Assembly (NCBI RefSeq): GCF_003918875.1
Contig: NW_025765400.1
Span: 1 to 64,000 of the forward strand
DNA from: Haliotis rubra
Lineage: Eukaryota
Direction of reading: 5' to 3'
DNA: 64,000 nucleotides
This document shows, in pieces, positions 22,179-63,670 of this stretch (its first letter is position 1; the number at the start of each line of letters is the position of its first letter). The notes beneath the pieces were generated by a model. The model searched no databases, was not told the DNA's origin, and saw only the letters and a program-made list of their open reading frames with translations. Both the position numbers and the translations under genes were made by a program.

Positions 22179-22326
22179 AAGTGTTTTAGCCGAGTATCAA
22201 AACCAGGCTAGCAGAAGAAAAAGGATTTATTCCCCACATTGTATTTGTTTTGACATTTGAATTAGAAAGACGATCTGTTGTTCTGCGCATGATGTTTCTC
22301 TCTCGCCGTCTTCTCATCATTCCCTG

Positions 22327-25300
22327 TCATGCAAGTACAGCTCCTCCCATTTTCTTTCTCAACAATAGTGATAAACCCCCGTCAAAACCAGCCGGCGGCC
22401 GAAGATCCCACGTTGATCTTGATAACCTTCGTAAGCCTCCAATCTTTGCTGTGTGTCATATAAAAGCATTATCAAATTTTGTAAAAATACTTTTACATAA
22501 TTACACATCATGCATTATCAGAAATGTCTTAGCCATAAAAGCATGTTAAATTAAGTACACTCCGAAAGAAATGGTAATATTTATCTAACAGTGAATAATA
22601 CACCACAGATTAGATATAATCGATTTAGATTAATGAAGGCAAATTATGGATGATGGATGTTTTGATCATAACAGAATAAGACGTCGACATACATATAAGT
22701 ATCTTCCCTTAACAGATTATATATGATACAAAATAGAATTTAAGAGTCGCTATATAACATATTCACTACTTTTATACATTAGGAGTAATTAAAACTGGTT
22801 AATAAAATGGAACATTTAATGACATCGGCATGGTGAATGTCCAAAAGTTCCACCAGTTGAGAAATGTGAATCAAAAGTATTTCTGTTTGCTGCTTAGGAC
22901 CAGTCAGTTCCTATTCGTAACGCCAATGTGTGATTTTACATCAAACTGTAATTCTGATTGTGTAGTGAATTTAATTAGACGTGGATGTCCAGCTTTGGCA
23001 CAGACACATGATGCTCGGTTGTTTTATTATCGCTTTCGTCTTTCTTGTGTCCACACTTCCTAGATTTTAGTGTTCACCCCGCTAGTGCATGCTCATGTCG
23101 CACTACATGTACAGTGACGAGGAAGGACGAAAAATCTATGCCGAGTGAATTGAACTTTGTGAACTCACGAGGGACAGATAATCCGGTCCTTCCTCGACGC
23201 AGTACATTTAGTTTATTGCTTTTATGAACCATCGTCAAATTAAAACATGAGAGGCTAAAACGATCTTAACACAAATCCTTTATGTGAAAGGCGAAAGCGT
23301 ATTTTGCCATTTTTCTAAGCGCGTGAAATAGCAAAATTTCGAGGAATGTCAGCTGAGCACAGAGCAACTACAAAGTGATTCTAGGATAGTCAAATTGATC
23401 AATTGGAACGCATTGATTTCTAAGAATATGAGAAACAGTTTTCCAATTTAAGGATTCAGCATTAATTTGGTATCAAAATTAAATGTTTGGAAGTAAAGGA
23501 TACAGGGTATCTGGTAAGTAGTCAGACATGTTAAAATTGTTCACTGGCCAATTTAGCCATTGCCATTGCACCAGGTTAGATTGTTTGAAAAAATGCTGAA
23601 AAATTAGCAAGTACACAAAATTACACAACGTCAACCAAACGTAATGGCACAAGCTGATTAGAGAAGTGGAACTGATTGACAGATGATGTAAATACTGGTA
23701 GTGGAAGGGTTAGACAGATGATGACAGAATACTGGTAGTGGAAGGGTTAGACAGATGATGACAGAATACTGGTAGTGGAAGGGCTAGACAGATGATGATA
23801 GAATACTGGTAGTGGAAGGGCTAGACAGATGATGACAAAATACTAGTAGTGGAAGGGCTAGACAGATGATGACAGAATACTGGTAGTGGCAGGGTTAGAC
23901 AGATGATGACAGAATACTGGTAGTGGAAGGGCTAGACAGATGATGACAGAATACTGGTAGTGGAAGGGCTAGACAGATGATGACAGAATACTGGTAGTGG
24001 AAGGGTTGACAGATGATGACAGAATACTGGTAGTGGAAGGGCTAGACAGATGATGACAGAATACTGGTAGTGGAAGGGCTAGACAGATGATGACAGAATA
24101 CTGGTAGTGGAAGGGGTTGACAGAATACTGGTAGTGGAAGGGTTTGACAGATGATTTGAAATACAGGTACCGGAAGGGTTAGAGACGGTTTGGAAGACTG
24201 GTAGTGGAAGGGCGAGACAGGTGATTCGTAATACATAAAGTGGAAGGGTTAACGGTAGTGGCAGGGCTAGACAGATGTTTGGGGATACTGGGAGTGGAAG
24301 CGCTTGAGAAATGTTTGATAGTGGCTGTGGAAATCTTAAACAGATGGTTGGGAATTCTATCAGAGGATGGGCCAATCCGACGATTGGGAAGGGGTGAACG
24401 ATGCTAGCCTTATTAGCCAGATTTTCAGTGTCGCTTACCAGGCCGTTCCGTTCTGCCATGTCTCCTTCGTGCAGTGACAGATTGAGCGGTCAACAGGCCG
24501 ACTGAAATTGAACAATATCAAGCCTATAAGCGATACTAAATACTGCAGTTCAATACTAAACGCCTGTGTCACGGCCGCTTGTGTCAGTCACGTTAAGTTC
24601 GAATCCCCACATGGGCACAATGTGTGAAGCCCATTTCTGGTGTCCCCGCCGTGATGTTGCTGGAATATTGCTAAAAGCGGCGTAAAACCAAACTCAGTCA
24701 GTCAGTCAGTCAGTCAGTCACGTTACACCCAAATACACCTAATATACTACTGCCTTAAAGTTACCATGCACGTGTTGAGAACGCATGAAAAACGTATGTG
24801 ATACGCGTGCTAACGGGGTTGCACACGAAGTGATCATCCATTGAACATGCGTGTGCCACGGATGTTGGGCTTGGCTGTAAATGCAGCAATAGTGCCCTAG
24901 TGTTTCCGGAGCACCTTGCGGTCGTTTCACTCTGTGAAACAAGAGAAAGGGGGACGCCTTGGAGTATTAAAGTCTCTGTGTCTGAGTGGGGTTGACATTT
25001 TAAAGGGCAAGTTTACACGAAAATATACCATTTTGACTTCATTTTGTCAACAATAAAAGCATTTTTCTAGTGGGTTCAAAGCCAAAAGAGTATAGATATC
25101 ATGAGTAACAAATTTAGTTTCTACATTATATCGATTCAAAGCTCTATTTTACACATATTTTCATGCTATTAATTTCACTATGTATTTCTCTGGCATTGGA
25201 ACTAGGCACGAGACCAATCTGAATCATTTGGGACCAATTACGTCATAATCTAAGGGGTAACTCTGACCTTTTTAGCCTGAAAGCAAAAGCTTCATAATGG

Positions 25301-25778
25301 CATAACATTTCAACACGTCAGCGTATTTCAACTTTCAACATTTCAGTGTATAGCTTCTAACATTGATAGTAATTACATGTAATTCTAAAATTCCCTATGA
25401 TTTCACACAGGAAAAGGAGTTATTTTTCGTGTACACTTCCCCTTTATCTTGCGGCATGGAATCATCATTGGCTGGCACTAAACAGAGAGTATATACACCT
25501 ACGAGAGATGAGATATAAGGCATGTAAAACCACCGTGATCATGATCAACAGTATGAAATTGATTTTTGTTAAATCAGTTGCCTCCTTCAGTTGTTCGGTT
25601 TGGACCCTATGACATAATTTCTATTGTCATGACATGCTCAAATCTGCTGCAAAGGCCAACAGACTAAATCAAATAGATGCGTATCGCACAATGATACCAC
25701 TGTACTAGACACTGCACTGTACACATATATACAAAAGTCTTAGTACTTACCCAGAACCATCACAAGAAACAACTTCAT
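22327..25778 (-). CDS. Secreted prepropeptide, copy 1 (70 aa; buccalin/allatostatin-A-like core). Exons 25778-25751, 24501-24439, 22448-22327
   Basis: MKLFLVMVL|VGLLTAQSVTA-RRRHGRTERP|AKIGGLRRLSR-STWDLRPPAGFDGGL-SLLLRKKMGGAVLA*. Donors GTAAGT/GTAAGC, acceptors TTTCAG/CACACAG. Both introns phase 1; coding exons of 28 and 63 nt, identical in size to the other three copies. Confidence 0.85.
23678..24370. repeat. 37-bp minisatellite in intron 2 of peptide gene copy 1
   Basis: Unit acagatgatgacagaatactggtagtggaagggctag, about 12 well-conserved copies, then progressively degenerate copies towards 24370. Confidence 0.95.
24593..24720 (+). mobile_element. 5'-truncated tRNA-derived SINE with (AGTC)n tail
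   Basis: B-box GTTCGAATCCC, body ...cccatttctggtgtccccgccgtgat..., tail gctaaaagcggcgtaaaaccaaactc(agtc)n. Related copies at 30037 and 36037. Confidence 0.8.
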
Positions 25779-25820: not shown

Positions 25821-25856
25821 GGAAGTGATTGCTGTGTAACAACCTCGCACTAAATA
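25821..25856 (-). promoter_or_regulatory. Core promoter of peptide gene copy 1 (TATA-like + Inr)
   Basis: TATTTAGT (25856-25849) about 30 nt upstream of Inr-like TCACTT (A at 25826). Same position as in the other copies. Confidence 0.55.
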
Positions 25857-37915: not shown

Positions 37916-39895
37916 TTAATTGTATAACATTTCTTTGTCCTCATTGGTTTCACAGCGATTCTTTTGACTACAGAATTGAAGTAAACTTGCATATAATGTA
38001 GGAAACTGTATATCAGAACAAGTGTTGCAGAACAAAAATGATTTATTGCTCATTTTGTTTTGATGCACATTAGAATCGTAGCGCACGTGTTCCTTCCATC
38101 TCACCATTCCGTGCCAGAACGTGATACACTTCTGCCTTTTCAGACTGCCTACGAAACCAGACCAACCACGACGATCTGGTATGGATCTTGTGAACCGTGC
38201 TCTTGCATAGACTGTTTTTGCAAAGGAAAACAGAAGCAAAATGTAATTTATTAGACAATTGGAAAAATCCCTTTCATGGTTGCATATCATTCCACTATAA
38301 CAATAACAATTTATGAAATATACAAAATATTCCACATACATGTCAAATACTTTAACTTGACATAATCACAATTCATTTTCAAGACCAATTCAGTTTTGAT
38401 ATACAATGGACAAATTACTGATACTAAGAGCGATTAAAATAGGTTTACAAAGTGTTCTATAACACTGTCATTTGATTCTGAATGTACAGAATTTTGATCT
38501 AGTAGGAATTTGACAAAGGAAGAAAGCATGCCATTGTGACTATCTTAGAAGTACAGTGGACTCCTTCTAAACCGACATCTCTCTATCCGACATTCCCAGA
38601 AAACCGACATATATAGTTGGTTCCGAATTTGTCCCTATATAATATCATATAAGAAACTCCCTCTCATCGGACCTCTCTATCCCGAATTCCGACACTCAGA
38701 TCCCGTCCGAAAACATGTTTTTAGTGCAAATTGACACTCTCTATTTCTTTGTACCTGAAGTCAGTATGGCAAAACAATACAAAACATGAACTTGACAACT
38801 GTAGCCGCGAGGTTAATATCATAACTGTCTTTCTTTGCTGTCCACAATATTGTATTTGTACTGCCTCTGAACTTGTACAACTACTCCATTTTGAGCTGCT
38901 ATTGTAATCCCTTTGTAGTGAGATGTCGTGCTTTGTAAACTTCCTTATGTTTATGCAATTGCGGATTGTACATCCAGATTCTCGGTTAACTTATTGGTTT
39001 TGTCTTCGACTTACTGGTTGGGGCCAACTTGATTTTTTGCCTTTCTGCAACAACACATTCTGCAGTCAACAGAGTGGCTGAAAAAGAACAAAGTAAGCCT
39101 AAAATTCAACTCTAATATCCTATCTACGCATCTGTGTAACACTGTAGCCAGTACGATCACACCCAAAACACACAATAGTATCTGTCCGAGTGTAAGCAAT
39201 GATTAGCCTTAGGTCCAGTACTTTTATCATTAATATAGATGCTTAGGCTTCTACATTCAGATAATTGAATCGCATCGAATAATACTTGTATATGGAGCTT
39301 CGGGTCTACATATTTCTTTAAATGACTTGATATATTGCAACAAAAGATAAAAGTTTTCAATGTCTTCTCACATTGAGGTTGTGAAATTAGTTATGTTAAG
39401 CAACGAACAGAGGATGAAGCTCAAAGGAAGTAGCAGTATGTTACATATCTGGCCAAGACGAAACATGTAAAGAGTATATCACAAGATATGGTGTGTGGTT
39501 TTGCTTTGCCTGGCGATCGGCATTTAGGTTATACACCTAGGACGGGATGCATTGGAGTCCGTACAATGTGTCCGATTAGGATATCCTTTTTGCGCTGCGG
39601 CATGGTATCTCACTATGTTAGTATGAAGAGAGATTGTCAATCTGTAGGGCATTTGCAGCGGTATCATGATTAATGGTGGGTGGTCTGTGTAGATTTGACT
39701 TTGAACTCAATGTTTAATTAAGTGTCTAAATCTTTCAGAACCCTGTTACCTTTATCTATCATGACATACTACATCATGAACACATCAAAGCAAATGTACA
39801 TTGTACCAATTCTTAAAGTCTCGGCATTATACTGTGTTGATGTAAACAGAAGTGTAAGTATACATACCAAGAACCATCAGGAGAAACAGCTTCAT
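37916..39895 (-). CDS. Secreted prepropeptide, copy 2. Exons 39895-39868, 39077-39015, 38211-37916 (ancestral stop at 38101)
   Basis: MKLFLLMVL|ATLLTAECVVA-ERQKIKLAPT|IYARARFTR-SIPDRRGWSGFVGSL-KR... Donors GTATGT/GTAAGT, acceptors TTTCAG/AAACAG. One extra base at about 38133 shifts the tail after KR. AATAAA at 38047-38042 and 37901-37896. Confidence 0.88.
38554..38740. mobile_element. pogo/Tigger-like terminal fragment in intron 2 of copy 2 (shared with copy 4 at about 58500-58650)
   Basis: ta|cagtggactcc terminus with repeated ccgacat motifs. Absent at the equivalent site of copy 3 (about 48350). Confidence 0.6.
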
Positions 39896-44911: not shown

Positions 44912-45276
44912 TATTAAATGTGAGGTCATTCTGAGAAAAAATATTGCAGTCTTTTTAGTGCTGTATAGAACAGATTAACATTAAAATGTATATCGCATGT
45001 ACCTTTCTCTTGAAGTGATGTCATCAAGCAGTTGAAGGGCAGTGGAATCATATGAGTCAGAGATACCTGTAAGACTTAAGTTGTCCCTCCCAATGGCCTC
45101 AACAACAGCATCTGTTACTGGACTGACTGGAGTTGGAGGTCCGCCTCCTGTAAATGCAAAAATAAAACATAGATTAATTGCTTCAATATGATTATTTTAT
45201 GTAGAAACATATCACAAACCCAGGAGGTAAGTACTCACTTTATCCTGAAACACTGGAATAGAGTAGGTTTATGTTG

Positions 45277-47145: not shown

Positions 47146-47885
47146 ATACTAAGAAGTTGAATAAGCTTAAACACTGATTTATAATAATATGCTTTAATAT
47201 ACATTATTCAATAATTAACATACGATGGGCATTTTGATATTAAATTTAATTCATCTTCAATGTCATCTTTACACATTAAACATTTACGATCAGCAATGTT
47301 TTCGTATCTGCCAGTTTCTATCGCAAAGTTATGTCAGCTGAGTCGGAAGTTTGATAAATACTAGTATTTGGAATAGATTTACGTAAATAATATTCAAGCG
47401 AACATTGATTGACAACATTTTTATTAATTACGCAACCTCAACGTTTAATTTATAGTTGCAATGAAACACGCAATTGAATAATTCAAAACTCCCAGATAAA
47501 ATGAAAACACAAACTCAACGTTTAATGATAAATGTTATGTGTAAACACAACATATGTTGCGATTTATAACCAGTTCAGCGATTGAATTATGTGTTTTACT
47601 TAGAAATGAAAACATAAAGTCGAACCAGTATTTTTATTACTGTAACCAGTTCAGCGTTAACTGCATTAACACGTATTTTAAATATGTGTTTTACTTTGAA
47701 ATGAAACCACAAAGTGGAACCAATGTTGTTGTTACCTTAACCAGTCCAGCGTGAATTTTCAAGCATGCAATTGAATTATTCACTACTGATAAGTAAAATA
47801 TGTATCAGAACTAGTATAGCAGAACAAGAATGATTTATTGCGCATTTTTGGTTTTGATGCACATTGCGCGTTCCTCACCATCTCA

Positions 47886-50735
47886 TCATTCAGTGCCAGA
47901 ACTTGATACACTTCGCCTCCTCAGACCGCTTGCGAAACCAAACTTATGAGAATCTGTTACTGATGCTGTTGCATACACTGTGTCAAACAGAAAATAGAAG
48001 CAAGGTGTAATTTGTTAGACAATTGGAAAGGGAAAAAGTCACTTTCATAATTACTTATCATGTGTGATCAGAAACAATATTCCACTATGACAATTAAAAT
48101 ATATGAAGTATATTCCAATACAAAATGACACCATGACTACAATGATACAACATATTTAACATATATGTCAAACACTTAACATATTCACAGTTTATTTTAA
48201 AGCTAAATTCAATCTCGATATACATTGGTAAATGATGTCAGATTCAAAACACATGTATGGATGCAATAGTGGCTGAATGTACAGAATTTGGATTTGGTAG
48301 GAAAAGTAAACTATGAAAAAGCATGTCACTGCGACTATTGTGACTATCGGGAAAGTATTTCTTTGCACCTGAAGTCATTATGGCAAGTAAATACAAATCA
48401 TGAACTTGACAACTGTAGCCGCAAAGGTAATCGCTGTCTTCCATTGATGTCAGCAATATTGTATTTGTACTGTCTCTGAACTTGTACTGCTATTCTATTT
48501 TGGGCTGCTATCGTAATTAATTTGTAGTGAGATGTCGTGCTTTGTAAAGTTCCTTATGTTCCTTGTGTGATTGCTGATTGTATAAAATCCCTTTCTTTGT
48601 CGATATCACACCGAATTCCCTTACATCCAGAGTTTGGGTTAACCTAAAAGTTTAACATGGGAATCGACACGTTACACCATCAACATTTGCCTTCGACTTA
48701 CCGGTAGGGGCCAGATTCATATTTCCCAAGTTTGCAACGACACATTCTGTAGTCAACAGAGTGACTGAAAAAGAAGAAATTCAGCATATAAGCGAAACGG
48801 AATTCAATTCTGATATCTTATCTAAGCATCCGTGTTACACTATAACCTTTAAAGGTCACATGCAACGTAAAACACAACTCGCAGATTCTGTATGGACGTA
48901 CCGAAACAAATCATCAAAAATGCAAATTCAATTATAAAGATGAAAAATAACGCGATGAAAAAAACCGCGCGAAATCGTAGTTCAAACGATTCACTAATTT
49001 TCCCCCAGCGCTTGGGGGAATTCAAGTGGTTTCAACAGCTGGGCTGCGCTCATAGCACATGCGCAGTGAAATAAGTTCGCGGAGCTTGGAAGCGGGTTGT
49101 CCGGTGAATACTCGGTGAAGGCTTTGGTGTGAGCTATTTTCTAATGTTTTGTTGATATTTCGCCGGCGCGAGCTTTTTATGTGTTATTACAGTAGATTAC
49201 CGATTTAACTGTTTATATAATTTCATTTGTCTATTTCACCACACGTTCTTCTTACCGAGTCACTTTCTCAGTTCAATACTTAAAAGCAATGTCATTATTT
49301 AGCGTTGACAGAATTTCTAATTGTGATATAGATATGTCGTTGTCACAGACAAAACTTAATGTCTGTTTTATTGACACCGATGTGTCTGCCTGCCCGTCTG
49401 CTAATGACAATATACAATACACAACTTCGATCACTGACCACATGCAATTTGAACTTAACACCTATCAGGCTATACACCATAAACAAACGCATTGATTTAT
49501 GGCCCGAGTTAGGTCTCTGTCACATTATGTAATCACACAGACAGGCAGGTGTGATACTTGTACACATGACATGTTATGATGTCTGTTGATTACAAAATGT
49601 TATAAACAAAAAATGAGCATGTATTTACAAAACCCAACATCTCTACATATACACACACAATGAGCCGTGAGCGCTTCTGCAAATGAACCAGCCGTTACAC
49701 TTGAGTGCACATCCACCCGCTCTGACTGGGTTCGGTATTCCGGCTGCTTCGTTTCTTGGGAAGTAAACCCAAGTACAAAATATTGCACTTTTGATTTGCG
49801 ATTGTACGGTTGCAATTTTGTTGATATGTTTTTTCATAACCAGCAATGTATATTATATGTCATGAATAAGTGATAATTGTGTTTTAATTATGTTTGATTT
49901 TTTGGTTGCATGTGACCTTTAAGATCACATCCAAAAACACAGTATTGCCTGTCCGAGTAATAGCCATAATTATCAGGAAGTCAAATTACTTACAGTTGAT
50001 AGAGATGCTCGGGCTTCTACATGCAGATAGTTTAATCGCATAGAATAACACATATACACATGTACGTATATGGATCTTCGGATCTACATGTTTCTTTAAA
50101 TGAATCAATGTTAGGCAACAAAAGATAAAAGTCACCAATGTCTTCTCATATTGAGGTTATCAATTTAGGTATGTTAAGCAACAAATAGAGGATGAAGCTC
50201 AAATGAAGTAGCAGTCTTTTACATCTCTGGCCAGGCCGAAACATGTGAAGTGTATACCATAAGATTGTGCGTGGTGTTCTCCCGCCTGGTGCTCGGCATT
50301 TAGGTGATGTACTAGAGACTGGATGCTTTGGAGTCGGTATAATGTGTCTGAGTAGGCTATCTGTGTAGCGTCGTCACGATATGGCTGAGATATTGCCGAT
50401 GTGATGTTAAATATTAACTCACTCACTATCTGTGTAGCGCCGCGGCATGGTATCTCACTATGTTAGCGCGGAACAGAGAATGCTTTCTGTAGGGTATTTT
50501 CAGCAGTATCATGAGTAATGTGGTCTCTGCGCACTGTAGATTTGACTTTGAACCGAAACTAAGACTCAGTCCAAAGAACCATGTTACTTTCATCAACTGT
50601 GCGTGCAGAAGCCAAACAACCCAAATCAAATGCATGCACATTTTACTGCTACCAATACTCTCGGCATTACACTGTACTACTGTGAACACAAGTGTAAGTA
50701 TACATACCAAGAACAATCAGGAGAAACAGCTTCAT
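47886..50735 (-). CDS. Secreted prepropeptide, copy 3 (60 aa). Exons 50735-50708, 48764-48702, 47977-47886
   Basis: MKLFLLIVL|VTLLTTECVVA-NLGNMNLAPT|VYATASVTDSHKFGFASGL-RRRSVSSSGTE*. Canonical GT-AG phase-1 introns and intact frame. AATAAA about 47 nt past the stop. Confidence 0.9.
48853..49918. mobile_element. Kolobok-type non-autonomous DNA transposon in intron 1 of copy 3
   Basis: TTAA TSD (48849-48852, 49919-49922). TIR aggtcacatgcaac / gttgcatgtgacct (purine termini, unlike the CC termini of piggyBac). Empty site in copies 2 (about 39150) and 4 (about 59305). Confidence 0.85.
50371..50425 (+). mobile_element. Very short LINE 3'-end insertion nested in an old SINE
   Basis: 14-bp TSD ctatctgtgtagcg; (ACTC) tail. 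Confidence 0.9.
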
Positions 50736-50776: not shown

Positions 50777-50814
50777 GGAAATGTTGCTCCTGGTCTCTAC
50801 CATGGCTTTAAATA
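50777..50814 (-). promoter_or_regulatory. Core promoter of peptide gene copy 3
   Basis: TATTTAAA at 50814-50807; Inr variant ACATTT at the homologous position. Confidence 0.6.
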
Positions 50815-51950: not shown

Positions 51951-53309
51951 TGGTGAATATAAGTCACAGCACTCCTTTCACATCCAGAGGAAAGCGATTA
52001 GATATACTTAATGCATCTTGCATGTGACATATTTTTACATGCGAACTGCAGGGACAAGCTGTATTTTTATATTACTGCATCTGACGCGTGAAGAGATACA
52101 TTTTTAAAAGTTGGGATCATGTTTAAAGTATTTCTATTCGCCATCCTCGGCAGTCGACCAGGAACAAATTCTATATATCAATATAACTTCACTCATCTGC
52201 ATCCTTCTTGTTCTATGAGTCAAACATTGATATTGACTGTTATATTTACCGCAAGTATTGCTAGCATTTTCAAAAAAAAATACGGTTTTAAGTGTATGTT
52301 TCAGTTGAACATTATCCACAAAAGCGCAAATATGTTTTCTTTTTTCCCCTGTCACTGTCCGTATGAATACAAATTACATACGCCCACTTTACATGATTAA
52401 AAAGTTTACCAGACACACTGAGGGTTTATTATATGTCATAAAAGTGAACCCTGCCAGGGCATAATATGCCTATTGTAGTAGTAGAATACATTCTCTAATT
52501 AACACCTGCCACAAGGGCCATTCCTTTTCAGTTTGTCATGCAGTTGGTGTATTCACGAAAACTTCATGAACTTGTCAACAGGCAATTGGTTGTGTTGTCC
52601 AAACACGGGCGGATTGAGGCAATTAATACATAAATTCCCTGTTTAATAAATCATAGGGTGACTAGATTAATTTGATCATTTACAAGAAGTAAGTGACAGA
52701 ATTCTTTAAGTCATCATCATTTTAGATCACGTTAAATCATTTCTAGAGAAACCAGTACACAAGCCCACACCATAGATGTTTCCATAAAGATACATATGAA
52801 CGATTCCAGTCTAACAAAAGCATTAAATCCCTAATAAGCAAGTCGACGTGATCTCTAATGCCCAGGATTTATAACCACTTATTATCACAATAGTTTAGGA
52901 AAAATGTTCAAATCTGGAGTCACCTGCTATTTACTGAGGGTCTCAAAAGGCTTGAAACGACGTCTGCACATTTATCTCTGTATGTATCAATATGAAATGT
53001 GTCTGTCACTGTTGTGACACCCGACATTAAGGAAATTATATGTTAAGAAAATACTAAAACCTGTATTGAGAACAAGACGCCAATTGTAACCCAATGCTTG
53101 TTTGGTCGGCATTCTTGAAGTACGACTTTACATATACCAATTTACTGTTGACGTATAGAGGGGCGTTCCCGTGTATATTCTTACATCATTATCAGGCACA
53201 GTGAAAGAACCCCAAAAGGGGCGAATAACCACATCCACATTTTTAATAAGTTTTGATCCCTTGATGACATGGATGTGTCCGAGAAAAGCCATGGTAGGAC
53301 TCATAGCTT

Positions 53310-56300
53310 GTCGCCATCAAGGATGGCCAAACATTCTTCCTCATCTAATTATGTACCTGAATTCCAAAAATATCAAAAACAGCAAGAAAAGAAAGCTATT
53401 AATTTCAAATCAGATATTAGGGAAGACTACAATGAAACCTTTTCGATGCATGAGCTTCATACGTCTCTAGATCAGGCTCATGATATTGCATCAGGAGCTG
53501 ATAACATACATTATCAACTCCTGAAGCACTTACCAGAATCATCTTTTGAGACGCTCTTACATATTTTTTTATGACATTTGGACATCTGGAAACTTTCCTT
53601 CGTCGTGGCGTGATGCTATAATTGTTCCCATCCCTAAACCTCGACGTGATCATACTGATCCTTCCAATTATAGGCCAATTTCACTTACTAGCTGCGTTTG
53701 CAAGACCATGGAACGCATGATAAATAATCCACTTGTTTGGTACTTGGAAACCAATAACCTAATATCAGATATATAATGTGGTATCCGCAAAAACAGAAGT
53801 ACCATCGATCATTTAGTGCGTTTGGAATCTTTTGTTAAGAATGCCATAATTATTAAACAACATGCAGTGTCGATCTTTTTCGATCTAGAAAAAGCATATG
53901 ACACCACATGGAAACGAATCTGCAAAAACCACCCGGACAAAATCCACCCGGACAAAATCCACCCCAAAATTGCAACCTAGGACAAAATCCACCCGGAAAA
54001 AAACCCCCGGACAAAATCCACCCTATGAAAAAAAAACTAATGACATGTTTAGTCACAGAAATGAATTATATTCATATCAGTCATTCATAATCGATAACAA
54101 ACACAACCAAAATATATATGTAAGCACATTTTTGCATTTATAAATATGACAAGATCACATTTTCACATTTCACATTTATGAATTATTCATGCATCAATAC
54201 ATATATAAATATGAGAACAGCATATATTTTCACACATTCAGACATATCTATGACTTAACATCTTGCCACATTTCAACAACGCATTTCAACAACGCTCTAA
54301 CTTCTGCTGGATGGGAAGTAGCGGAGTCTAGAAGAACCTGGTTTGGTGTCTCTCGGGATGTACTGGCCTTCTGCTTCATTTCTGATCAAAGTGTGAGACT
54401 ACTTAATGATACATGAAAGAGGATTAAGTAGTGATCAAAATGTGACAAATGGAGAAACCTTTAATGTTTGAAACAACATCTAGGAACAACAGCCAATTAG
54501 GAAAATGCTATCAAAACAATGCTTGCAATGCTTGAGAAAAACAACTTGATCAAAGATCAGGACACACTAAAACTTTTAACAATAGCAATTTGAGAAGGGT
54601 GGATTTTGTCCATTTTTTTGTTAAGAAGAGGTGGATTTTGTCCGGGGTGGCAATTTTGGGGTGGATTTTGTCCGGGTGGATTTTGTCCGGTCACCCATGG
54701 AAACATGGTATTTTAAAAGACTTACATGACTTTGGATTACGAGGCCGTTTGCCTCAATTTATATCCAACTCTTTAAATGACAGACAATTTCAAGTCCGAG
54801 TTGGTTCAACCCTGTCTGATCATTACAATCAGGATCAGGGTGTAGCACAAGGCAGTATTTTGTCTGTCACTTTGTTTAGCATCAAGATCAACAGTTTATC
54901 CAAGGTGTTAAATGATTCAATTGATGGATCACTTTTTGTGGATCATTTTAATATTTCTTGTCGTGGTAAAAATATGCATACTATTGAACGGCAACTGCAA
55001 TTGTGTTTAAACAAAATAAATAAATGCATATGGTGTCTTGAAAACGGCTTTAAATTTTCTAAATCAAAAACTTATTGTATACATATCTGCCGTACGTACC
55101 CACCTCATAAACTATTTATTAAATGGCACTCCCATCAAAGTCGTCAAGGAGGCGAAGTTCTTGGGTCTAATTTTTGACTCCCATTTAACGTTTCTGCCAT
55201 ATGTTAAATCCCTTAAAGCTAAATGTCTGAAGGCACTTGACTTATTAAAAGTCGTTTCCAATTCTAAGTGGGGAAGGGATCAAACTGCTCTCCTACACCT
55301 GTATCGATCACTGGTCCGTTACAAACTTGATTATAGCTCCATCGTTTATGGTGGAGCCTGCAAAAGCAACCTTAAACTATTAGATTCTGTCCACCACCAA
55401 GGTCTGAGACTTTGTATTCGGTCATTCAGAACTTCTCCTGTTGACATTCTCTACGTCGAGGTCGATGAGCCGTCTCTTACACAACGCCATATCAAATTAT
55501 CTTTACAATATATTACCCAACTATATTCTAACGAGTCTAACCCTGCATTCAACTGTGTTTTCAACCCTCTTTACGAGGATCTGTACAACAAAAAGTCTTC
55601 TCTTGCTCCGCCTCTGGGACTAAGAGTCAAACCTTTCCTTTCTGCTACTGGCATTGAGCTACAAAATATAGCTCCTTCCCGTCTTCTTTCTCCTCCTCCT
55701 TGGCAATTAGTGAGGCCACAAGTTGACCTAACACTGACAACATTTAAAAAATCAGAAACTAATGAATTACAATATTAACACGAATATAACTAATTAAAAA
55801 CTAAATATAATACATACAAATCATTATTTACACATGGGTCCAAGGATGGTGGCGCTGTTTGTTGTGCCACTGTCATTGGATCCAGAGCAATATCTTCTCG
55901 ACTACCAGATAACGGTTCTATTTTCACAGCAGAAGCAAATGCCATATTAACAGATTTAAAATATATTCAAGAACACCCTAAAAATAAACAATATATAAAC
56001 TATTCGTGCCTTCAGGCTATAAAAATCTTTCTTGCAAACATCCACTTTTAATTCAAATTATAGAATTATGTAATGATCTTGCTACTGGCCAATACGACAT
56101 CATCCTCTGTTGGTTACCCAGCCACGTTGGTATTTCTGGGAACACAAAGGCCGATCTTGCTACTAAGGCAGCACTCAACAAATCTGTGACACCACTTCTT
56201 ATTCCATACTCTGATTATAAAGCTGTCATCAAATCTTATATCCGTGATCTAATGCAGAAGAAGTGGGACACCCAAGTAGGTATCAATAAATTACATGCAA

Positions 56301-57150
56301 TAAAACCTTATATTTTGGTTATACCTACTTGGGTTGTCAGTCCAGATTTGAAGAAGTCATCATACGACGATGTCGTATTGGCCACACAAGATATACTCAT
56401 GAATACCTACTGAGGATCCTAGATGAGGATCCTCCGTTTTACATCCCTTGTGATGAAAGAATCACGGTCAAGCTGTCTTGCTTGACTGTGTTGAATATTC
56501 CATCAAAAGTGATAACTATTTCAAATCACGAACTACGAAGGATCATTTTAATAATATCAGTTCTCAGTTAATTATTGCATTTTTGAAAGAATTAGATTTG
56601 TTAACTTATTTGTAAATAGAATATTATTTTATGATTGGGAGTTTAAATTAGTAACCCAGATTTTTAGTGGCTGTATCCTCAAAAAAGGGTTTAAGTACTG
56701 TAAAATTATTGTCCCCCCGAGAGGGTACGTAAGTCCACAAGCATTCAAAGTAAATTAGAACTCTCCACTATTTTTAATCGTAGAATATGTGTACTCTTAA
56801 ATGTATGGCTAGATCTGTCTTAGTTGCTAATGGCTGAAGGGATGGTATAAATCCAGCTAGGGTCCATGTAGGAAGCAAATGTACTGTAAGTCCCCATGGT
56901 CCCTGGTATGGTGATCTAACTTCAGTTGTTGGCAAGATATACCCTGTTTTTACACTTGTCATTTATAGTTAACATGTTTTAGATTTAATTACTGGTTTTA
57001 AATTTATATTTGTGATAAACTAGTAGTTTTACTGTTCTTCGTCAACACTGTTATTTCTAATTTTATTGATCAATAATATAATTATTAATTGTTCTCGTCA
57101 CGATATGGCTGAAATATTGCCGATGGGACGATATATATTAACTCACTCAC
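53310..57150 (+). mobile_element. 5'-truncated I/Nimb-type LINE (RT + RNase H + 3' UTR, (ACTC)n tail), degenerate
   Basis: NYRPISLTSCVCK, FFDLEKAYDTTWK|HGIL, QGSILSVTLF, KFLGLIFD, WLPSHVGISGNTKAD, RCRIGHTRYTH. Ends ...gccgatgggacgatatatattaactcactcac. Confidence 0.92.
53916..54695. mobile_element. Mutator-like non-autonomous element with tandem-repeat TIRs, inserted in the LINE RT
   Basis: 9-bp TSD catggaaac. Inverted arrays of the 15-bp unit ccggacaaaatccac at both ends. Removing the element restores ...DTTWKHGIL... Confidence 0.85.
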
Positions 57151-58083
57151 TGACTCAAAAGCGGTTTCAAAATTATTGTCAATATGTGGAATAGCCACTC
57201 CTTTGCACTAGGTTATTTGGGCAAACATCCCAACATTAACTTCCATTTCTGCAAATTCCATTATTTGTTCCGATTACCAAACCTCTACAGTATCTAATGT
57301 CACTATTTCAATGTGTAATCTGTTATGTGGTATACGGTAGGCATTTCTAGTGTTAAACAAAATCAACTGTTTTGGGCCATATTTGACTCCAATGAGTTGC
57401 GAGAATTATTCACTTTTTCAAATAATTGTATACTTCAGGTACCACAGTCCACCTGAATCAAAGACTTAAAAATAGAGATGCGTGTATATAAACCAGCTGT
57501 TAAATGTGCGGCTTCATCACTTCAGGGTTTTACCGCCTACAGCAGACATTGTTTTATCGCCATTCTAGCAGTGAGTCAATAATGAAGAACACAACTTGAT
57601 GGATAGCTTCATACCGGTGTAAGAATCGACACCAAAACGTCTTTCTATGCAATATACAAGGAGTTATCATCCATTACAGAATAAAAGCTCTTAGTAAATG
57701 ATGAGTCTGTGGAAGCAGAACAAAAACTATTACAATCATTTTCACAGCACAAATAAATAAATGTTAATGCGACAGCGTGTCACACGGTCTTTGTACTCTC
57801 ATTTGATTTGTACTGACGCTTCTTGTCATGCTTTTGTTATTAATCTGTAGCAGTTCGGATTGATATGTAAATCTAGTTTATATTATAATGCAATTGTTGA
57901 TGATATAACATTTCTTTGTCCTCATTGGTTTCACAGAGATTCCTTTACCTACAGAATTGAAGACAACTGAAGACACCGACAAGTAAAACATGTATCAGAA
58001 CTAGTGTTGCAGAACAAAATTGATTTATTGCTCATTTCGTTCTGATGCACATTGGGATCTTAGTGAACGCGTTCCTCTCCATC

Positions 58084-59618
58084 TCATCTTTCAGTGCCAG
58101 AACTTGACACACTTCGCCTTCTCAGACCGCCGGCGAAACCAAACCGACGACGATAATTTGTAATTGATCTTGTGAACCGTGCTCTTGCATACCCTGTTTT
58201 GAAAAAGGAAAATAGAAGAATGATGTAATTTGTTAGACAATTGGAAAAGCCCCTTTCATGGTGACTTATCATTCCACCATAACAATCACATTATATGAAG
58301 TAAATTCCAATGCCAAATGACACCATGACCATAAAATGTAGAATATAACAGATTAAATAAATATACAAAATATTCAACATATATATCAAATACTTTAACT
58401 GAACATTATTCTTCACAATATATTTTAAAAGTCAATTCAGTTTTGACATGCATTAGACAGATTAATCATAATAATAGTGATTAAAAGTGGTTCTCAATCC
58501 CTGTAAACTGACAGATATATTTGGTCCCGAAGTTGTCCCTATGTAATATCATATTAGAAACTGTCCCCCTCTTCCGACATCTCTCTATTCCGAATTCCGG
58601 TACTCAGATCAGGTTCCAAAGCATGTTTTTTAGTGCAAATTGACTCTCTCTATTTCTTTGTACCTGAACTCATAATAGCAGGACAATACAAAACATGAAC
58701 TTGACAGCTGTAGCCGCGCGGTTGATTAATATCTTGTCTTTCATTGCTGTCAGCAATATTGTATTTGCCTTGCCCTTGAACTTGAACAACTACTCTGTTT
58801 TGAGCTGATATTGTAATTCCTTTGTAATGAGATGTCGTGCTTTTTATTCTTCATAATGTTTATGTGATTCTCTAGTATTTTTACTGTCCATCGTCGACAT
58901 GTTTTAATCTTCCAAATGATTTCACTTTTTATTGTATAAATTGTTTTCGTCACTATATGGCTGAGATATTGCCAATGTGACGTTAAATATTAACTCACTC
59001 ACTCCTAATGTTTATGTAATCGCTGATTGTACAGAACTTTTTTTTTGTCGGTTTTACATGGAATTACCGTATTTCCAGATTCTGGGTTAACTTATTGGGT
59101 TCACTATTGGATAACTTCAGAATCGACACCTAACACAATCAACATTTGACTTCGACTTACTAGTTGGGACCAGCTTGATTTGTTGCCGTTCTGCAACAAC
59201 ACATTCTTCAGTCAACAGTGTGGCTGCAAAAAGAACAAAGTACGCCTAAAGTGAAATTCAACTCTGATATCCTATCAAAAAATATGTGTAACACCAAAGC
59301 CAGTAAGATCACATCCAAAACACACAATAGTATCTGTCCGCGTGTTAGCCATGATTAGCAGGAAGTCCAATATTTTCATCATTGTGATAGATGCTTAGGC
59401 TTCTACATTCAGATAACTGAATCGCAAGGAATAACACTTAAGTGTCCCAATCTTTCAGAACCATCTTTTCTTTATCTACCATGACCTACTAGATCATAAA
59501 CAGATACAAGCAAATTATGTACATTGTACCAGTTCTTATAGTTTCGGTATTATACTGTGCTGGTGTAAACACAAGTGTAACTATACATACCAAGAACCAT
59601 CAGGAGAAGCAGCTTCAT
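58084..59618 (-). CDS. Secreted prepropeptide, copy 4 (66 aa). Exons 59618-59591, 59223-59161, 58193-58084
   Basis: MKLLLLMVL|ATLLTEECVVA-ERQQIKLVPT|RYARARFTR-SITNYRRRFGFAGGL-RRRSVSSSGTER*. Donors GTATGT/GTAAGT, acceptors TTGCAG/AAACAG. Intact frame. AATAAA at 58029-58024. Confidence 0.9.
58866..59005 (+). mobile_element. 5'-truncated LINE 3' end in intron 2 of copy 4
   Basis: TSD taatgtttatgt; (ACTC) tail. Empty site in copy 2 (about 38945). Confidence 0.85.
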
Positions 59619-60254: not shown

Positions 60255-61992
60255 TATACATAATTCCTGATGTTCAAGAAACAACATTATACATATTTAC
60301 TGAAATCATTTGAATGACTGAAATATTGATATTACTCTTAAAGTCAGTCTGGTTTTCATAGATATGTCTTCATTTTAGGAACAAGGTACAGCACATTGAT
60401 TTTCATGAATTTTATTGGATTGTGTTCATGAATTTTTATTTGAACATGGGAGTGTTCAGTGACACCTAGAACTACATTGAATCGTTGCCTTGTAACACTT
60501 GCAGCGATTGATCTGACAACACTTTGAGCCAGCATTGTTGCATTTAGTGAAACCTTGTCCACTACACTACAGTAAGAGTGTTGGTGAACAGCTTGCCGAA
60601 GGGAAATGGTTTTCTCAATGTTGAAGTCATCTGCAGAGTACAGTCTCGTAACACACATGTCGAATTGGTTACGAGCATACTTCCTATCGAGCTCACCACT
60701 TTTCACTGCCATAGTACACATTTCGATGTCACTGCACTCAATCACAACACCTGAATGGTTTCTTGGTTGGATGAAATGACATCTAGTTGACTGTTCTCTT
60801 CAGGAGTCTTCAGGATGTCAGTCGGCAAGCTAGTTGATTTCAATCCAGTGCGAGCGTCAGACCCTAACAGCGCCGCAAATGGAGATCTCCTGACTTTAGT
60901 CCCACAATCCAATTACTTGTATCATTATCACCAATCCAAGCAATAAGCATATCCTTGATGTCACAATTTGCCCTTTCTACTGAACCTTCACTTTGGCGGT
61001 ATCTTGGTTTTCCATGTACCATCACCAAAAATCTTCAGCTCAGAAATAACCTGGGCAGTAAATCCAGATCCATTATCACTTTGAAGAACGGATGGGGCAC
61101 CTAGGAGGAGGAAGATGTCAAGAAGCTGATACGCCACTTCTACTGCGCGTTTAGAACTCAGTGGCCGCAATACACAAAACTTAGTCAGATGGTCTGGATA
61201 CGCCATGATCCATTTGAACTGTCCTTGAGTTATGGATTGCATGTCGATAAGATCGACTTGTGCTCTGGAGTCTTTGGAGATGATTGGCTTTACTACGGTC
61301 CCTTTTGTTGTAGCTCTCTTACGCTTCCGCTGACATTCAACACACAAGTTCTTGAAAAGGGGTCAATGCTTCAATGGTTATGTCTGCGTAGTTCTTGGCC
61401 AGTTCATGAACCATTTTGTCCCGTCCCCCATGGCCCGTCGCAACGTGACCCTGTTTGACAACTTCATAGGTCTCTTCTATGGAAATGAAGTACAGGGGTG
61501 TTTCTTCTTCATGCTGACGTCTTCTTATCAGTCTGTTAATGTCACCACACTGGAGAACTTCATACTTCTTAAGAAGATAATACTGATGAGGAGTCTTCTT
61601 GGAGGTCTTGGATGCTTCTGGGAGGTCGCTGATGATTTTATAGTATTCTTCCATTGGTATCAGAACACGTTTGTTCGTCTCATAAATCTTGAAAAGTCCT
61701 TCTTTGTTGTGACTGAACTACACTAAGCCTTTGATCCTGCTGTATTTTATATACCATAAGAAGATATATCTATGAAAATCTGACTGACTTTCAATGTAAT
61801 ATCAGTATTTCAGTAATTGAAATGATTTCAGGAAATATGTATAATTTTGTTTCTTAACTTTCAGGAATTATGTATAATTACTAAAAATTTCAGTAAATAT
61901 GCCTAATTCCTGAGTGAATCAGACATTATATATAATTACTGAAATTTTCAGAAATTATACATATTTACTGATTTTACATATTTCTTGTAACA
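60255..61992 (-). mobile_element. Ginger-group (KRBA2/SCAND3-like integrase) DNA transposon, degenerate
   Basis: HVATGHGGRDKM...CVECQ (HHCC), RAQVDLIDMQ, DHLTKFCVLRPL, LQSDNGSGF. About 80-bp inverted repeat 60255-60336 / 61796-61876. TGT terminus at 61992; left end truncated. Flanked by CA-rich microsatellites. Confidence 0.8.
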
Positions 61993-63464
61993 TATACACG
62001 TACACGTACACGTACACTTGCACTTACACACACACACACATATGCACATATGGAAGAGATCCTTTAGGGAATCATAAATGAACTTCTACATACATGTCAT
62101 AATGAATTTTGTTTACAGAAAACCAACAGAACTGCGTTGGGCTTTTTAAGATCATAGACCAAAGGTCCCTTGAATACTCAGTGCAAGTTCTTTTCTGGTT
62201 AGGGACATCATAGACTGAAAGTTCCTACACCAATAATTTTCAAATTTAGTTTACGTATGACAAATAAATGGGACGAAGTTGTCAGCGAGTTTTGTCGTAT
62301 ACATTTCAGGGTCATTTTACGGAGTATTAACATGTTAATAATTACGCCGATGCTTTTATGATGATATCTGAGACAAACTGAGGACTAGATTTATTAGCTT
62401 GTCTATTATTTCGAAGCTTCGATTACCATGTCGTACTAGCAGCAACTTCATCAAATGCAATCATAATCAGTTTATGTCTTTTGCATGATTACTTGGGTAA
62501 AATTGTGATTTTGATTCAAAAGTACATACTTGAATACCTGACCTCAAAATCGACTCTCAGCACAATATATCGTTGTGTGGCAAGTTTATTCAACCAGGAA
62601 GAGTGTTCATAATGCAATATGCTGTTTCTGTTGACAGTCGGGATGGGGTAATGATATACCATATCTCGACTTGTGCTACGTTTGGATGGAGAGTTCGTGG
62701 AGGTACCATGTAGTACTGAAAGTGCATGGACAATCCCAACATTTCCTTACCAAGGTTATTATGGATGGAGAGATCCCGAACATCAAGGCAATATATAAGG
62801 GGCGTTCTTCTGCCTTGTTCATATCAAATTCCATCACGCAAATACGAATATTTGTTTTCCGGATTGAAAATCAGGGATATTTAACTGATAAATTTGGGAA
62901 CCAACGTCTGGCAATATCTAAATGATACTGAAGTCAAGTCAAGGTTCGACAACCGACGTTGAAAGCTGTTGTCTTATAAACTCACTCAACACGCCTGTAT
63001 TATTCCGTGAGGGGATACCATTTTCAAGAAAAGTATTTTACATGAAATAAAAGCTATTGTAGAATTCCGACTATATCATGGGCACATGTATCATTACCTT
63101 CCACCGATATAGACTGTTAATCTAGCAGGATCAGATACCTTACATCGTCTTAATCCAAGCAAACTGATTTAAAAAATCTATCCAAAAAGATCCTTCCATG
63201 AAACTGGGATGACAAGGATCACTTCAGGTTTTGCTGAGGAATACTTAGATTTTAAAATCCATCAGAACCTTTTGATATGATTATTGAAGAGAGCGTCATG
63301 CGTCGAATGTTAAAAAAAAGGTTACTGGTTACTGCACTTAAAGGAAGGTTCGGCTTACGTTTGCAAGTCGCCCATGTGACGTTTAATACTCAGTAACTCT
63401 ATCACTCACGCCATCACGCACACACTCACATTTGCAAAAGTCAGTGACTGGTACCACTGGCTCA

Positions 63465-63586
63465 TTATCCCCCGTCGCGCAAAGCGGGGGACAAAGTATT
63501 AAGTTTCGTCCGTCCGTCCGTGCAAATTGGAATATCTTAAGAACCGTTGACTAGAATCTGTCCATACTTGGTACCTAAGTTCATCA
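63465..63586 (+). mobile_element. Helentron/HINE-like non-autonomous element 5' part
   Basis: ttatcccccg...cggggga hairpin followed by a (GTCC)n microsatellite, the layout of DINE-1/HINE-type elements. Confidence 0.5.
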
Positions 63587-63587
63587 G

Positions 63588-63670
63588 TGAGTGAGTGAGT
63601 TAAAATTTAACGTCACATCGGCAATATTTCAGCCATATCGTGACGAAAACCCATGTTTTGTGAGTGAGTG
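63588..63670 (-). mobile_element. Short LINE 3'-end insertion
   Basis: 14-bp TSD cctaagttcatcag. Confidence 0.85.

What the first reader, a model, noticed from the sequence alone, without database searches (positions are those of the whole stretch)
58120..58193. Cores resemble buccalin/allatostatin-A neuropeptides but are single-copy and non-amidated: possible co-opted neuropeptide mimics
Seen: the core C-termini are AGFDGGL, SGFVGSL, KFGFASGL and RFGFAGGL. Established: Aplysia buccalin A is GMDSLAFSGGL-amide and buccalin B is GLDRYGFVGGL-amide. Buccalins come from one polyprotein with many repeats, each followed by G-K/R for amidation. Here each gene has one core, and the Leu is followed directly by KR or RRR (SLLL-RKK in copy 1), so there is no amidating Gly. 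Inference: a neuropeptide-derived or convergent peptide redeployed as an exocrine signal (pheromone, gamete or settlement cue, defensive mimic), like the hormone-mimic peptides of venomous molluscs. An alternative is an Arg-rich antimicrobial peptide; the copy 4 core carries +3 charge and no acidic residue.
Basis: partly seen in the sequence, partly recalled or inferred. Interest (0 to 1): 0.85.

Follow-up and report, generated by a model that had tools for sequence, protein, structure and literature searches.

The report
Four tandem small secreted-peptide genes
Four neighbouring three-exon genes in a mollusc-like genome each encode a small secreted precursor with one conserved Gly/Phe-rich core followed by a basic cleavage site. 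They form an orphan peptide family with no known relatives, and the likeness to buccalin/allatostatin-A is only a loose short motif, not a shown neuropeptide mimic.

Summary
The four cores lie on the minus strand at 22372-22392, 38141-38161, 47922-47945 and 58123-58146. Each sits in the last exon of a compact three-exon gene. All four copies share a TATA-like box at -78/-79, a 28-nt exon 1, a 63-nt exon 2, two phase-1 GT-AG introns and an AATAAA signal.

The shared motif G-F-x-[GS]-[GS]-L occurs only at these four places in about 128,000 six-frame codons. A di- or tribasic site follows it directly, or after four residues in copy 1. No Gly precedes that site. The reading frame is kept up to the basic site and not beyond it.

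The buccalin/AstA reading fails the family's defining features:
- the strict Y/F-X-F-G-L/I motif is absent;
- there is no amidation signal;
- each precursor has one core, not 7-29;
- there is no Pfam hit and no relative among 1.84 billion proteins.

The loose motif match is expected in about 3% of random 45-residue stretches.

Best reading: a fast-evolving (pN/pS about 1), lineage-specific family of convertase-processed secreted peptides that end in a free Leu. The function is unknown. A secreted signal fits better than an antimicrobial peptide, because copy 3 is not cationic. There is no expression evidence.

The parts
25851..25856 (-). copy 1: TATA-like box, 78 nt upstream of the ATG
25751..25778 (-). 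copy 1 exon 1 coding part (ATG plus 27 nt; first 9 residues of the signal peptide; ends in phase 1; donor GTAAGT)
24439..24501 (-). copy 1 exon 2 (63 nt; rest of the signal peptide plus the start of the pro-region; phase 1 to phase 1)
22327..22448 (-). copy 1 exon 3 coding part, including the stop codon at 22327-22329
22372..22392 (-). copy 1 core AGFDGGL, followed by SLLL and then RKK
22226..22231 (-). copy 1 AATAAA, 98 nt after the stop codon
39968..39974 (-). copy 2: TATA-like box at -79
39868..39895 (-). copy 2 exon 1 coding part
39015..39077 (-). copy 2 exon 2 (63 nt)
37916..38211 (-). copy 2 exon 3 open frame to its first stop codon. After the basic site the frame differs from copies 3 and 4, and it runs 129 nt past the conserved AATAAA at 38042-38047. 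A second AATAAA lies at 37896-37901.
38141..38161 (-). copy 2 core SGFVGSL, preceded by RR-GW and followed by KR
50808..50814 (-). copy 3: TATA-like box at -79
50708..50735 (-). copy 3 exon 1 coding part
48702..48764 (-). copy 3 exon 2 (63 nt)
47886..47977 (-). copy 3 exon 3 coding part including the stop codon. It has a 15-nt in-frame length difference from copies 2 and 4, upstream of the core.
47922..47945 (-). copy 3 core KFGFASGL, followed by RRR
47834..47839 (-). copy 3 AATAAA, 49 nt after the stop codon
59691..59697 (-). copy 4: TATA-like box at -79
59591..59618 (-). copy 4 exon 1 coding part
59161..59223 (-). copy 4 exon 2 (63 nt)
58084..58193 (-). copy 4 exon 3 coding part including the stop codon at 58084-58086. 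The finding's span 58120-58193 lies inside it.
58123..58146 (-). copy 4 core RFGFAGGL. The 7-mer FGFAGGL is flanked by RRR on both sides.
58024..58029 (-). copy 4 AATAAA, 57 nt after the stop codon

Best explanation
The window holds a tandem array of four paralogous genes, all on the minus strand and 10-16 kb apart. Each has three coding exons and encodes a small prepropeptide of 60-70 residues (copy 2 is longer because its tail is read in another frame).

Shown by the sequence:
- a conserved TATA-like box;
- an ATG with A at -3;
- identical exon sizes (28 and 63 nt) and intron phases (1 and 1);
- canonical splice sites and a conserved poly(A) signal;
- a hydrophobic N-terminus ending in V-[VT]-A at residue 20;
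- one conserved core, G-F-x-[GS]-[GS]-L, followed by a di- or tribasic site.

Inferred:
- Signal peptidase removes the first 20 residues.
- A furin/prohormone-convertase-type enzyme cuts at the basic site after the core, and a carboxypeptidase trims the basic residues.
- This releases a peptide with a free, non-amidated C-terminal Leu (copy 1: ...GGLSLLL).
- In copies 2 and 4, upstream RR/RRR sites would give 9- and 7-residue peptides. Otherwise the product is the whole 29-36-residue stretch after the signal peptide.
- The tail after the basic site is dispensable.

The family is lineage-specific and fast-evolving: the signal peptide is conserved and the rest varies. It is not a member of the buccalin/AstA family. 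The most likely role is a secreted extracellular signal (hormone-, pheromone- or allohormone-like). I rank this above an antimicrobial role, but the function is not shown.
For: - Gene model: exon 1 was found in all copies. Exon 2 was found through its conservation with the divergent copy 1. Splice sites, phases, TATA-like box and Kozak context come, and the poly(A) signals.
- Copy 1 differs from the others at pS about 0.4-0.5, yet it keeps every gene feature and about 61 open codons. From the base composition I estimate a chance probability of about 0.016.
- The core motif is found only at the four cores in 127,996 six-frame codons.
- Length differences upstream of the core are multiples of 3 (15 nt in copy 3, 6 nt in copy 1). 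Just after the basic site the frame is not kept in copy 2.
- Basic sites flank the core.
- Charge is not conserved: the net charge from the signal peptide to the core is +7, +6, 0 and +8. The core motif is conserved. This favours a specific short ligand over a charge-driven antimicrobial peptide.
- The signal-peptide exon is under constraint against copy 1 (pN/pS 0.1-0.2). The rest is at about 1. This is the pattern reported for conotoxin genes (PMC3862624); myticalin precursors share the signal-peptide / mature-peptide / dibasic-site layout and the tandem clustering (PMC12294457).
- The minus strand is the coding strand. The acceptor-like site on the plus strand in copy 4 is absent in copy 2.
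Against: - No transcript, peptide or homologue evidence was found.
- pN/pS of about 1 over exon 2 and exon 3 also fits relaxed constraint, and the counts are small.
- Copy 2's tail frame runs past the conserved poly(A) signal, so copy 2 may be defective.
- The N-terminal processing sites are not conserved among the copies.
- The signal peptide was judged by eye, because no predictor is among the tools.
- Multi-copy, fast-evolving arrays are more typical of defence or toxin genes than of neuropeptides (general knowledge).
Confidence: 0.55

Rival explanations
1. One reading: the cores derive from, or converge on, buccalin/allatostatin-A peptides and act as non-amidated mimics released as an exocrine signal.
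For: - All four cores fit the union of the loose literature motifs: an aromatic residue at -4, Gly at -2 and/or -1, and a C-terminal Leu.
- The last five residues of copy 2 share 4 of 5 positions with the C-terminus of a scallop buccalin peptide printed in PMC5996578.
- The cores are flanked by convertase-type sites.
- One buccalin precursor is reported to embed an allohormone, the love-dart allohormone. So exocrine use of such peptides has a precedent.
Against: - The strict motif is met by no core.
- There is no amidation Gly, and amidation is reported as critical for the Aplysia receptor.
- Each precursor has one core, against 7-29 in buccalin precursors, and there are four genes where one is usual.
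- There was no Pfam hit and no precursor hit in the exhaustive search.
- The motif match is expected in about 3% of random 45-residue stretches, before correcting for the many motifs that could have been matched.
Confidence: 0.1
2. A linear, Arg-rich cationic antimicrobial (host-defence) peptide family, organised like the mussel myticalins: signal peptide, cationic mature peptide, dibasic site and discarded tail.
For: - Copies 1, 2 and 4 carry 8-10 Lys+Arg and a net charge of +6 to +8 in the 34-36 residues between the signal peptide and the core.
- The genes form a tandem array with pN/pS of about 1 and a conserved signal peptide.
- Myticalins are also three-exon, clustered genes with a phase-1 intron and a dibasic site.
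Against: - Copy 3 has net charge 0 and only one basic residue in that region. So cationicity is not the conserved feature.
- The conserved core is neutral and Gly-rich.
- The tail is short (11-14 residues) and not anionic.
- The coding sequence spans all three exons, whereas myticalin exon 1 is untranslated.
- No sequence relative was found.
Confidence: 0.15
3. The loci are young or decaying and have no peptide product. They would be transcribed non-coding or pseudogene copies whose open frames persist by descent and chance.
For: - pN/pS is about 1 over exons 2 and 3.
- The 3'UTR and promoter are better conserved than the coding part of exon 3.
- Copy 2's tail is in another frame and overruns the conserved poly(A) signal.
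- No homologue was found anywhere.
Against: - Copy 1 is too diverged to align in its exon-3 coding DNA. It still keeps the ATG, both introns at identical positions and phases, an open frame, the core motif and a basic site.
- Length differences upstream of the core are all multiples of 3.
- Exon 1 shows pN/pS of 0.1-0.2 against copy 1.
Confidence: 0.12
4. A cysteine-poor venom or defensive-secretion peptide family of the conopeptide type.
For: - The three exons correspond roughly to signal peptide, pro-region and mature peptide. Intron 1 is phase 1, the signal peptide is conserved, the last exon varies and it carries in-frame length differences. This matches the description of conotoxin genes.
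Against: - There is no cysteine framework.
- Introns are 0.37-2.0 kb, against more than 3 kb in conotoxin genes.
- Nothing indicates that the source is a venomous animal. The transposon relatives point only to molluscs in general.
Confidence: 0.06

Closest known systems
Buccalin / allatostatin-A (Buc/AstA) neuropeptide precursors
   Same: Both are secreted precursors cut at basic sites. The peptide C-terminus has an aromatic residue four positions before a terminal Leu and Gly at -2 and/or -1 (loose F-X-X-G-L and mollusc-type G-x-L forms).
   Different: The strict Y/F-X-F-G-L/I motif is absent. No Gly is available for amidation. There is one core per precursor instead of 7-29. There are four tandem genes instead of one, rarely two. 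The precursors are 60-70 residues, against about 500 in Aplysia. No sequence or profile similarity was found.
Myticalins (linear cationic antimicrobial peptides of Mytilus; PMC12294457)
   Same: Both are lineage-specific, tandemly clustered three-exon genes with a phase-1 intron. Both have a signal peptide, a variable mature peptide and a dibasic site followed by a discarded tail.
   Different: Here all three exons are coding and both introns are phase 1. The tail is short and not anionic. Cationicity is not conserved, since copy 3 is neutral. The conserved feature is a neutral Gly/Phe core.
Conotoxin/conopeptide gene superfamilies (PMC3862624)
   Same: Both have a three-exon signal / pro-region / mature-peptide layout with a phase-1 first intron. 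Both have a conserved signal-peptide exon and a fast-changing last exon with trinucleotide length changes.
   Different: There is no cysteine framework. The introns are much shorter. There is no evidence of a venomous source.
LASGLV/I-amide peptides (mollusc-specific, formerly called 'buccalin-like'; PMC8514136)
   Same: Copy 3's core contains the run A-S-G-L, which also occurs in that family's conserved sequence as printed in the paper.
   Different: That family is multi-copy and ends in V/I-amide. Here the peptide ends at Leu, has no amidation signal and has one core. The shared run is four residues in one copy only.

Membership tests
Buccalin / allatostatin-A | C-terminal Y/F-X-F-G-L/I motif (PMC12509031) | tested here: not met
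   None of the four cores matches the regex [YF].FG[LI]. The loose form F..G[LI] fits copies 1, 3 and 4, and the mollusc-type G-x-L fits copies 1, 2 and 4.
Buccalin / allatostatin-A | C-terminal amidation (Gly donor before the basic cleavage site) | tested here: not met
   The Leu is followed by KR, RRR or RRR, and in copy 1 by SLLL-RKK. No Gly is in that position. The pattern F..G[LI]G[KR] occurs 0 times in the window.
Buccalin / allatostatin-A | Polyprotein with many peptide copies (7-29 in molluscs; PMC8514136) | tested here: not met
   There is one core per gene. No stop-free stretch in the window has two or more [LI]G[KR][KR] sites.
Buccalin / allatostatin-A | Detectable sequence or profile similarity to known precursors | tested here: not met
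   Pfam-A returned no family at E <= 10. The profile of the four exon-3 peptides, searched against 1.84 billion proteins, gave four weak hits, all to unrelated repeat proteins. Caveat: the queries are only 29-39 residues long.
Buccalin / allatostatin-A | One precursor gene per genome in most molluscs | tested here: not met
   There are four tandem paralogues in 37 kb.
Buccalin / allatostatin-A | Activates the Buc/AstA receptor | not testable with these tools
   The literature reports that the non-amidated peptides tested did not activate the Aplysia receptor.
Myticalin-type linear cationic antimicrobial peptides | Consistently strongly cationic mature peptide plus an anionic C-terminal extension after a dibasic site | tested here: not met
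   Net charges are +7, +6, 0 and +8. The tails are 11-14 residues and not acidic.
Myticalin-type linear cationic antimicrobial peptides | Gene structure: exon 1 untranslated, coding sequence in exons 2-3, second intron phase 1 | tested here: not met
   The coding sequence starts in exon 1 and spans three exons. Both introns are phase 1.
Myticalin-type linear cationic antimicrobial peptides | Sequence similarity, especially of the signal peptide, to myticalins or modiocalins | tested here: inconclusive
The exon-3 searches returned no such protein.
Conotoxin-type gene superfamilies | Three exons roughly equal to signal / pro-region / mature peptide, intron 1 phase 1, conserved signal exon, variable mature exon | tested here: met
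   This is architecture only and is shared by other secreted-peptide families.
Conotoxin-type gene superfamilies | Cysteine framework in the mature peptide; introns longer than 3 kb | tested here: not met
   There is no Cys between the signal peptide and the core in any copy. Introns are 367-1990 nt.
Convertase-processed secretory peptide precursors (generic kind) | N-terminal signal peptide | tested here: met
   By inspection only. The sequence starts M-K, has a hydrophobic run of about 11 residues and has small residues at -3/-1 (V-x-A) at residue 20 in all four copies. No signal-peptide predictor was available.
Convertase-processed secretory peptide precursors (generic kind) | Conserved short peptide bounded by di- or tribasic sites | tested here: met
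   The contexts are RRR-core-RRR (copy 4), RR-core-KR (copy 2), K-core-RRR (copy 3) and core-SLLL-RKK (copy 1).

The most novel reading that the evidence does not exclude
This would be a lineage-specific family of non-amidated, single-core peptides that arose from, or converged on, the mollusc buccalin (G-x-L) pharmacophore. It would have been duplicated and diversified as externally released signals (allohormone, pheromone or settlement cue) acting on a Buc/AstA-type or related receptor.
Probability: 0.07. Interest if true: 0.7.

Novelty: new member of a known kind. Interest (0 to 1): 0.3.

Why it matters
If these genes are expressed, the array adds an undescribed family to the set of small mollusc secreted peptides. 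It has a clearly defined conserved core and cleavage site, so it can be looked for directly in peptidomic data. It also shows how such families evolve: a fixed signal peptide and untranslated regions, a free-running pro-region and one short motif held constant. It does not, on present evidence, bear on buccalin/AstA signalling. Lineage-specific small secreted-peptide arrays are common in invertebrate genomes, so the finding is of modest interest.

Tried and rejected
1. Plus-strand reading. The ORF at 58020-58163 has an acceptor-like site, but that site is not conserved in copy 2. Rejected.
2. The other forward frame of exon 3. It is not phase-compatible with the 63-nt exon 2, and copy 3 has a stop in it (my reading). 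Rejected.
3. Two-exon model (exon 1 joined straight to exon 3). It is phase-compatible but leaves only a signal peptide of about 10-12 residues. It was superseded once exon 2 was found through copy 1.
4. Pfam on all exon-3 peptides and two exon-2 peptides: nothing at E <= 10.
5. Word-indexed protein search with the copy 4 exon-3 ORF: no candidate.
6. Exhaustive profile search: only spurious repeat proteins.
7. Exact look-ups of two window ORFs to find the source assembly: not on record.
8. Metagenome scans with the exon-1 DNA pattern and with the copy 4 ORF: no relative.
9. Full-text literature search for the core and signal-peptide strings: no relevant paper.
10. Rfam and tRNA scans of the window: nothing.
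11. Species identification through a LINE reverse-transcriptase ORF. The best named hits are Pinctada and Haliotis at 41-47% identity. This supports a mollusc-like source but gives no species.
12. Search with the joined three-exon protein, or with joined exons 1+2 (the conserved signal peptide).
Full report

**What the window is.** The window is 64 kb, 38.9% G+C and has no N. It is crowded with retroelement and transposon ORFs. A LINE-type reverse-transcriptase ORF finds its best named relatives in Pinctada imbricata, Haliotis asinina and Haliotis rubra at 41-47% identity. Nothing is near-identical. The source is therefore probably a mollusc whose sequences are not in the searched collections. 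The species remains undetermined.

**Checking the observation.**
- AGFDGGL at 22372-22392;
- SGFVGSL at 38141-38161;
- KFGFASGL at 47922-47945;
- RFGFAGGL at 58123-58146.

The finding's span 58120-58193 runs from the start of the last exon of copy 4 to just past the core Leu. The residues after the Leu are KR, RRR and RRR, and SLLL-RKK in copy 1. No Gly intervenes.

**Gene model.** A self-comparison shows that copies 2, 3 and 4 lie in duplicated segments of about 2-3 kb at 72-85% identity. The three exons are as follows.
- *Exon 1.* Upstream alignments show a conserved ATG followed by 27 nt and a GT donor. The divergent copy 1 has the same 28-nt exon with a GTAAGT donor.
- *Exon 2.* Comparing copy 1's intron with the others exposed a single conserved island. 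It is a 63-nt exon with AG and GT borders in all four copies.
- *Exon 3.* It starts at a ...CAG acceptor and carries the core.

Each copy has a TATA-like box at -78/-79, A at -3 of the ATG, canonical donors and acceptors, and an AATAAA 49-98 nt after the stop. The junction codons encode V/A and A/I/V/R. The precursors are 70, 128, 60 and 66 residues long. Only four copies exist in the window.

The first 20 residues are M-K, a hydrophobic run and then V-[VT]-A. By inspection this looks like a signal peptide.

The plus-strand ORF over the same DNA has an acceptor-like site only in copy 4, so I rejected it.

**Is the core more than chance?** Copies 2-4 share it by recent descent. Copy 1 is the test case. 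Its synonymous divergence from the others is about 0.4-0.5. BLAST cannot align its exon-3 coding DNA to them. Only the promoter/exon 1 region, exon 2 and the poly(A) region align. Yet copy 1 keeps G-F-x-[GS]-[GS]-L at the same place in the exon, followed by a basic site. That motif occurs nowhere else in 127,996 six-frame codons.

Length differences upstream of the core are multiples of three (15 nt and 6 nt). Directly after the basic site copy 2 differs in length by one base, and its frame then departs from copies 3 and 4. So coding constraint reaches the core and its cleavage site and stops there. The stretch from the core to the poly(A) signal is nevertheless the best conserved DNA, at 86-92% among copies 2-4. 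This points to constraint at the RNA level in the 3'UTR.

**Mode of evolution.** Exon 1 is conserved, with pN/pS of 0.1-0.2 against copy 1. Most pairwise values for exons 2 and 3 (to the basic site) lie near 1, range 0.26-1.5; the low value is exon 2 of copies 2 and 4. The counts are small. A fixed signal peptide with a variable remainder is the pattern described for conotoxin genes (PMC3862624); myticalins (PMC12294457) share the tripartite precursor and the tandem clustering. It also fits relaxed constraint.

**How it most likely works.**
- *Shown:* a secretory-type N-terminus, and one conserved neutral Gly/Phe core bounded by basic sites. The contexts are RRR-core-RRR in copy 4, RR-core-KR in copy 2, K-core-RRR in copy 3 and core-SLLL-RKK in copy 1.
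- *Inferred:* signal peptidase cleavage after residue 20, convertase cleavage after the core, trimming by a carboxypeptidase, and a product with a free C-terminal Leu.

Net charge between the signal peptide and the core is +7, +6, 0 and +8. Cationicity is therefore not the conserved property, while the core is. I rank a specific secreted ligand above an antimicrobial peptide for this reason, but neither is shown.

Copy 2 may be defective. Its open frame overruns the conserved poly(A) signal by 129 nt and ends 17 nt before a second AATAAA.

**Comparison with buccalin/AstA.** The literature describes the family as follows.
- Peptides share Y/F-X-F-G-L/I-amide, loosely F-X-X-G-L/I-amide.
- C-terminal amidation is critical for the Aplysia receptor.
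- The Aplysia precursor is 505 residues long and holds 29 peptides (PMC12509031).
- Mollusc precursors hold 7-29 peptides, usually from a single gene (PMC8514136).
- Molluscan forms end in G-x-L-amide (PMC5996578).

Against this, the cores here compare as follows.
- No core meets the strict motif.
- The loose form and the G-x-L form each fit 3 of 4 cores, and their union fits all four.
- That union is expected 0.03 times per 45 random residues of this window. It appears in 2-7% of composition-preserving shuffles of the exon-3 peptides.
- There is no amidation Gly, no repeat structure and no buccalin-type polyprotein in the window.
- Pfam gives nothing at E <= 10.
- A profile of the four exon-3 peptides against 1.84 billion proteins gives four hits at E 1e-4 to 7e-4. 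All are unrelated repeat proteins.

The family therefore fails the membership test. That it might still act like a buccalin is not excluded, but the missing amide disfavours it.

**Other comparisons.**
- *Myticalins.* They share the tandem three-exon, dibasic-site design. But their exon 1 is untranslated, their mature peptide is consistently cationic and their tail is long and anionic.
- *Conotoxin genes.* They share the exon layout and the phase-1 first intron. But they have cysteine frameworks and introns longer than 3 kb.

**No relatives and no expression evidence.** All of the following were negative: the word-indexed search, the exhaustive search, the exact look-ups, the metagenome scans and the literature string searches. 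The most conserved handle, the signal peptide across exons 1 and 2, could not be searched because it needs the joined sequence.

**Verdict.**
- The neuropeptide-mimic inference is unsupported but not excluded.
- The object is a new, orphan member of a familiar kind, the small convertase-processed secreted peptide genes in a fast-evolving tandem array.
- Interest is modest.

Noticed in passing
window 2547-10328 (minus strand): An LTR retrotransposon of the BEL/Pao type. It has two 637-nt LTRs (2547-3182 and 9693-10328) that are 97.8% identical. The internal ORFs hit DUF1759 (gag-like), Peptidase_A17, the integrase zinc-binding and core domains, and DUF5641. The gag-pol region is read as several separate ORFs, so it is interrupted more than once. 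I did not analyse the breaks.
   Followed up: partly
window 1290-2535 plus 10329-14653, compared with 15892-21308: A segment of about 5.4 kb carries a LINE-type element (endonuclease, reverse transcriptase and RNase H domains). It is present twice at about 85% identity. The LTR element above sits exactly between the two halves of the first copy. The window therefore holds what look like a filled and an empty insertion site.
   Followed up: partly
window 41959-42932 (+): Fragments of a PIF/Harbinger-type transposase (DDE_Tnp_4, E 2.8e-20) lie between copies 2 and 3.
   Followed up: partly
window 53171-56413 (+) and 60356-61654 (-): A second LINE-like reverse-transcriptase remnant (RVT_1) and integrase-like ORF fragments (rve, Integrase_H2C2) flank copy 4.
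   Followed up: partly
window 23678-24225; 27481-27889; 29145-29339; 35451-35819: Minisatellites with units of 37, 41, 40 and 75 nt, in 5-12 copies each. The first lies inside intron 2 of copy 1 and accounts for much of that intron's extra length.
   Followed up: no
window 32654-32935, 44637-44922, 56876-57157, 58863-59004, and short pieces at 28187-28240, 50371-50427, 63586-63650: A dispersed repeat of about 280 nt occurs in both orientations at 77-98% identity. It is probably a SINE- or MITE-like element. One copy lies in intron 2 of copy 4 and a fragment lies in intron 1 of copy 3. There was no tRNA or Rfam match.
   Followed up: no
window 38042-38140, 47834-47921, 58024-58122, 22226-22371 (minus strand): The stretch from just after the core to the poly(A) signal is the best conserved part of the genes, at 86-92% among copies 2-4. 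It is conserved whatever the reading frame. This suggests a 3'UTR element under RNA-level constraint. I did not test it for structure.
   Followed up: no
window 22420-22440 (minus strand), copy 1 exon 3: Copy 1 carries a second, partial core-like run (I-G-G-L followed by RR) near the start of exon 3, upstream of the main core. It may be chance or the trace of an internal duplication.
   Followed up: no
window 51225-51949 and 62290-63051: Sequences 0.5-1.2 kb upstream of copy 3 and 2.7-3.4 kb upstream of copy 4 are 74% identical over about 775 nt. The duplicated unit therefore extends well beyond the genes. I did not examine its content.
   Followed up: no
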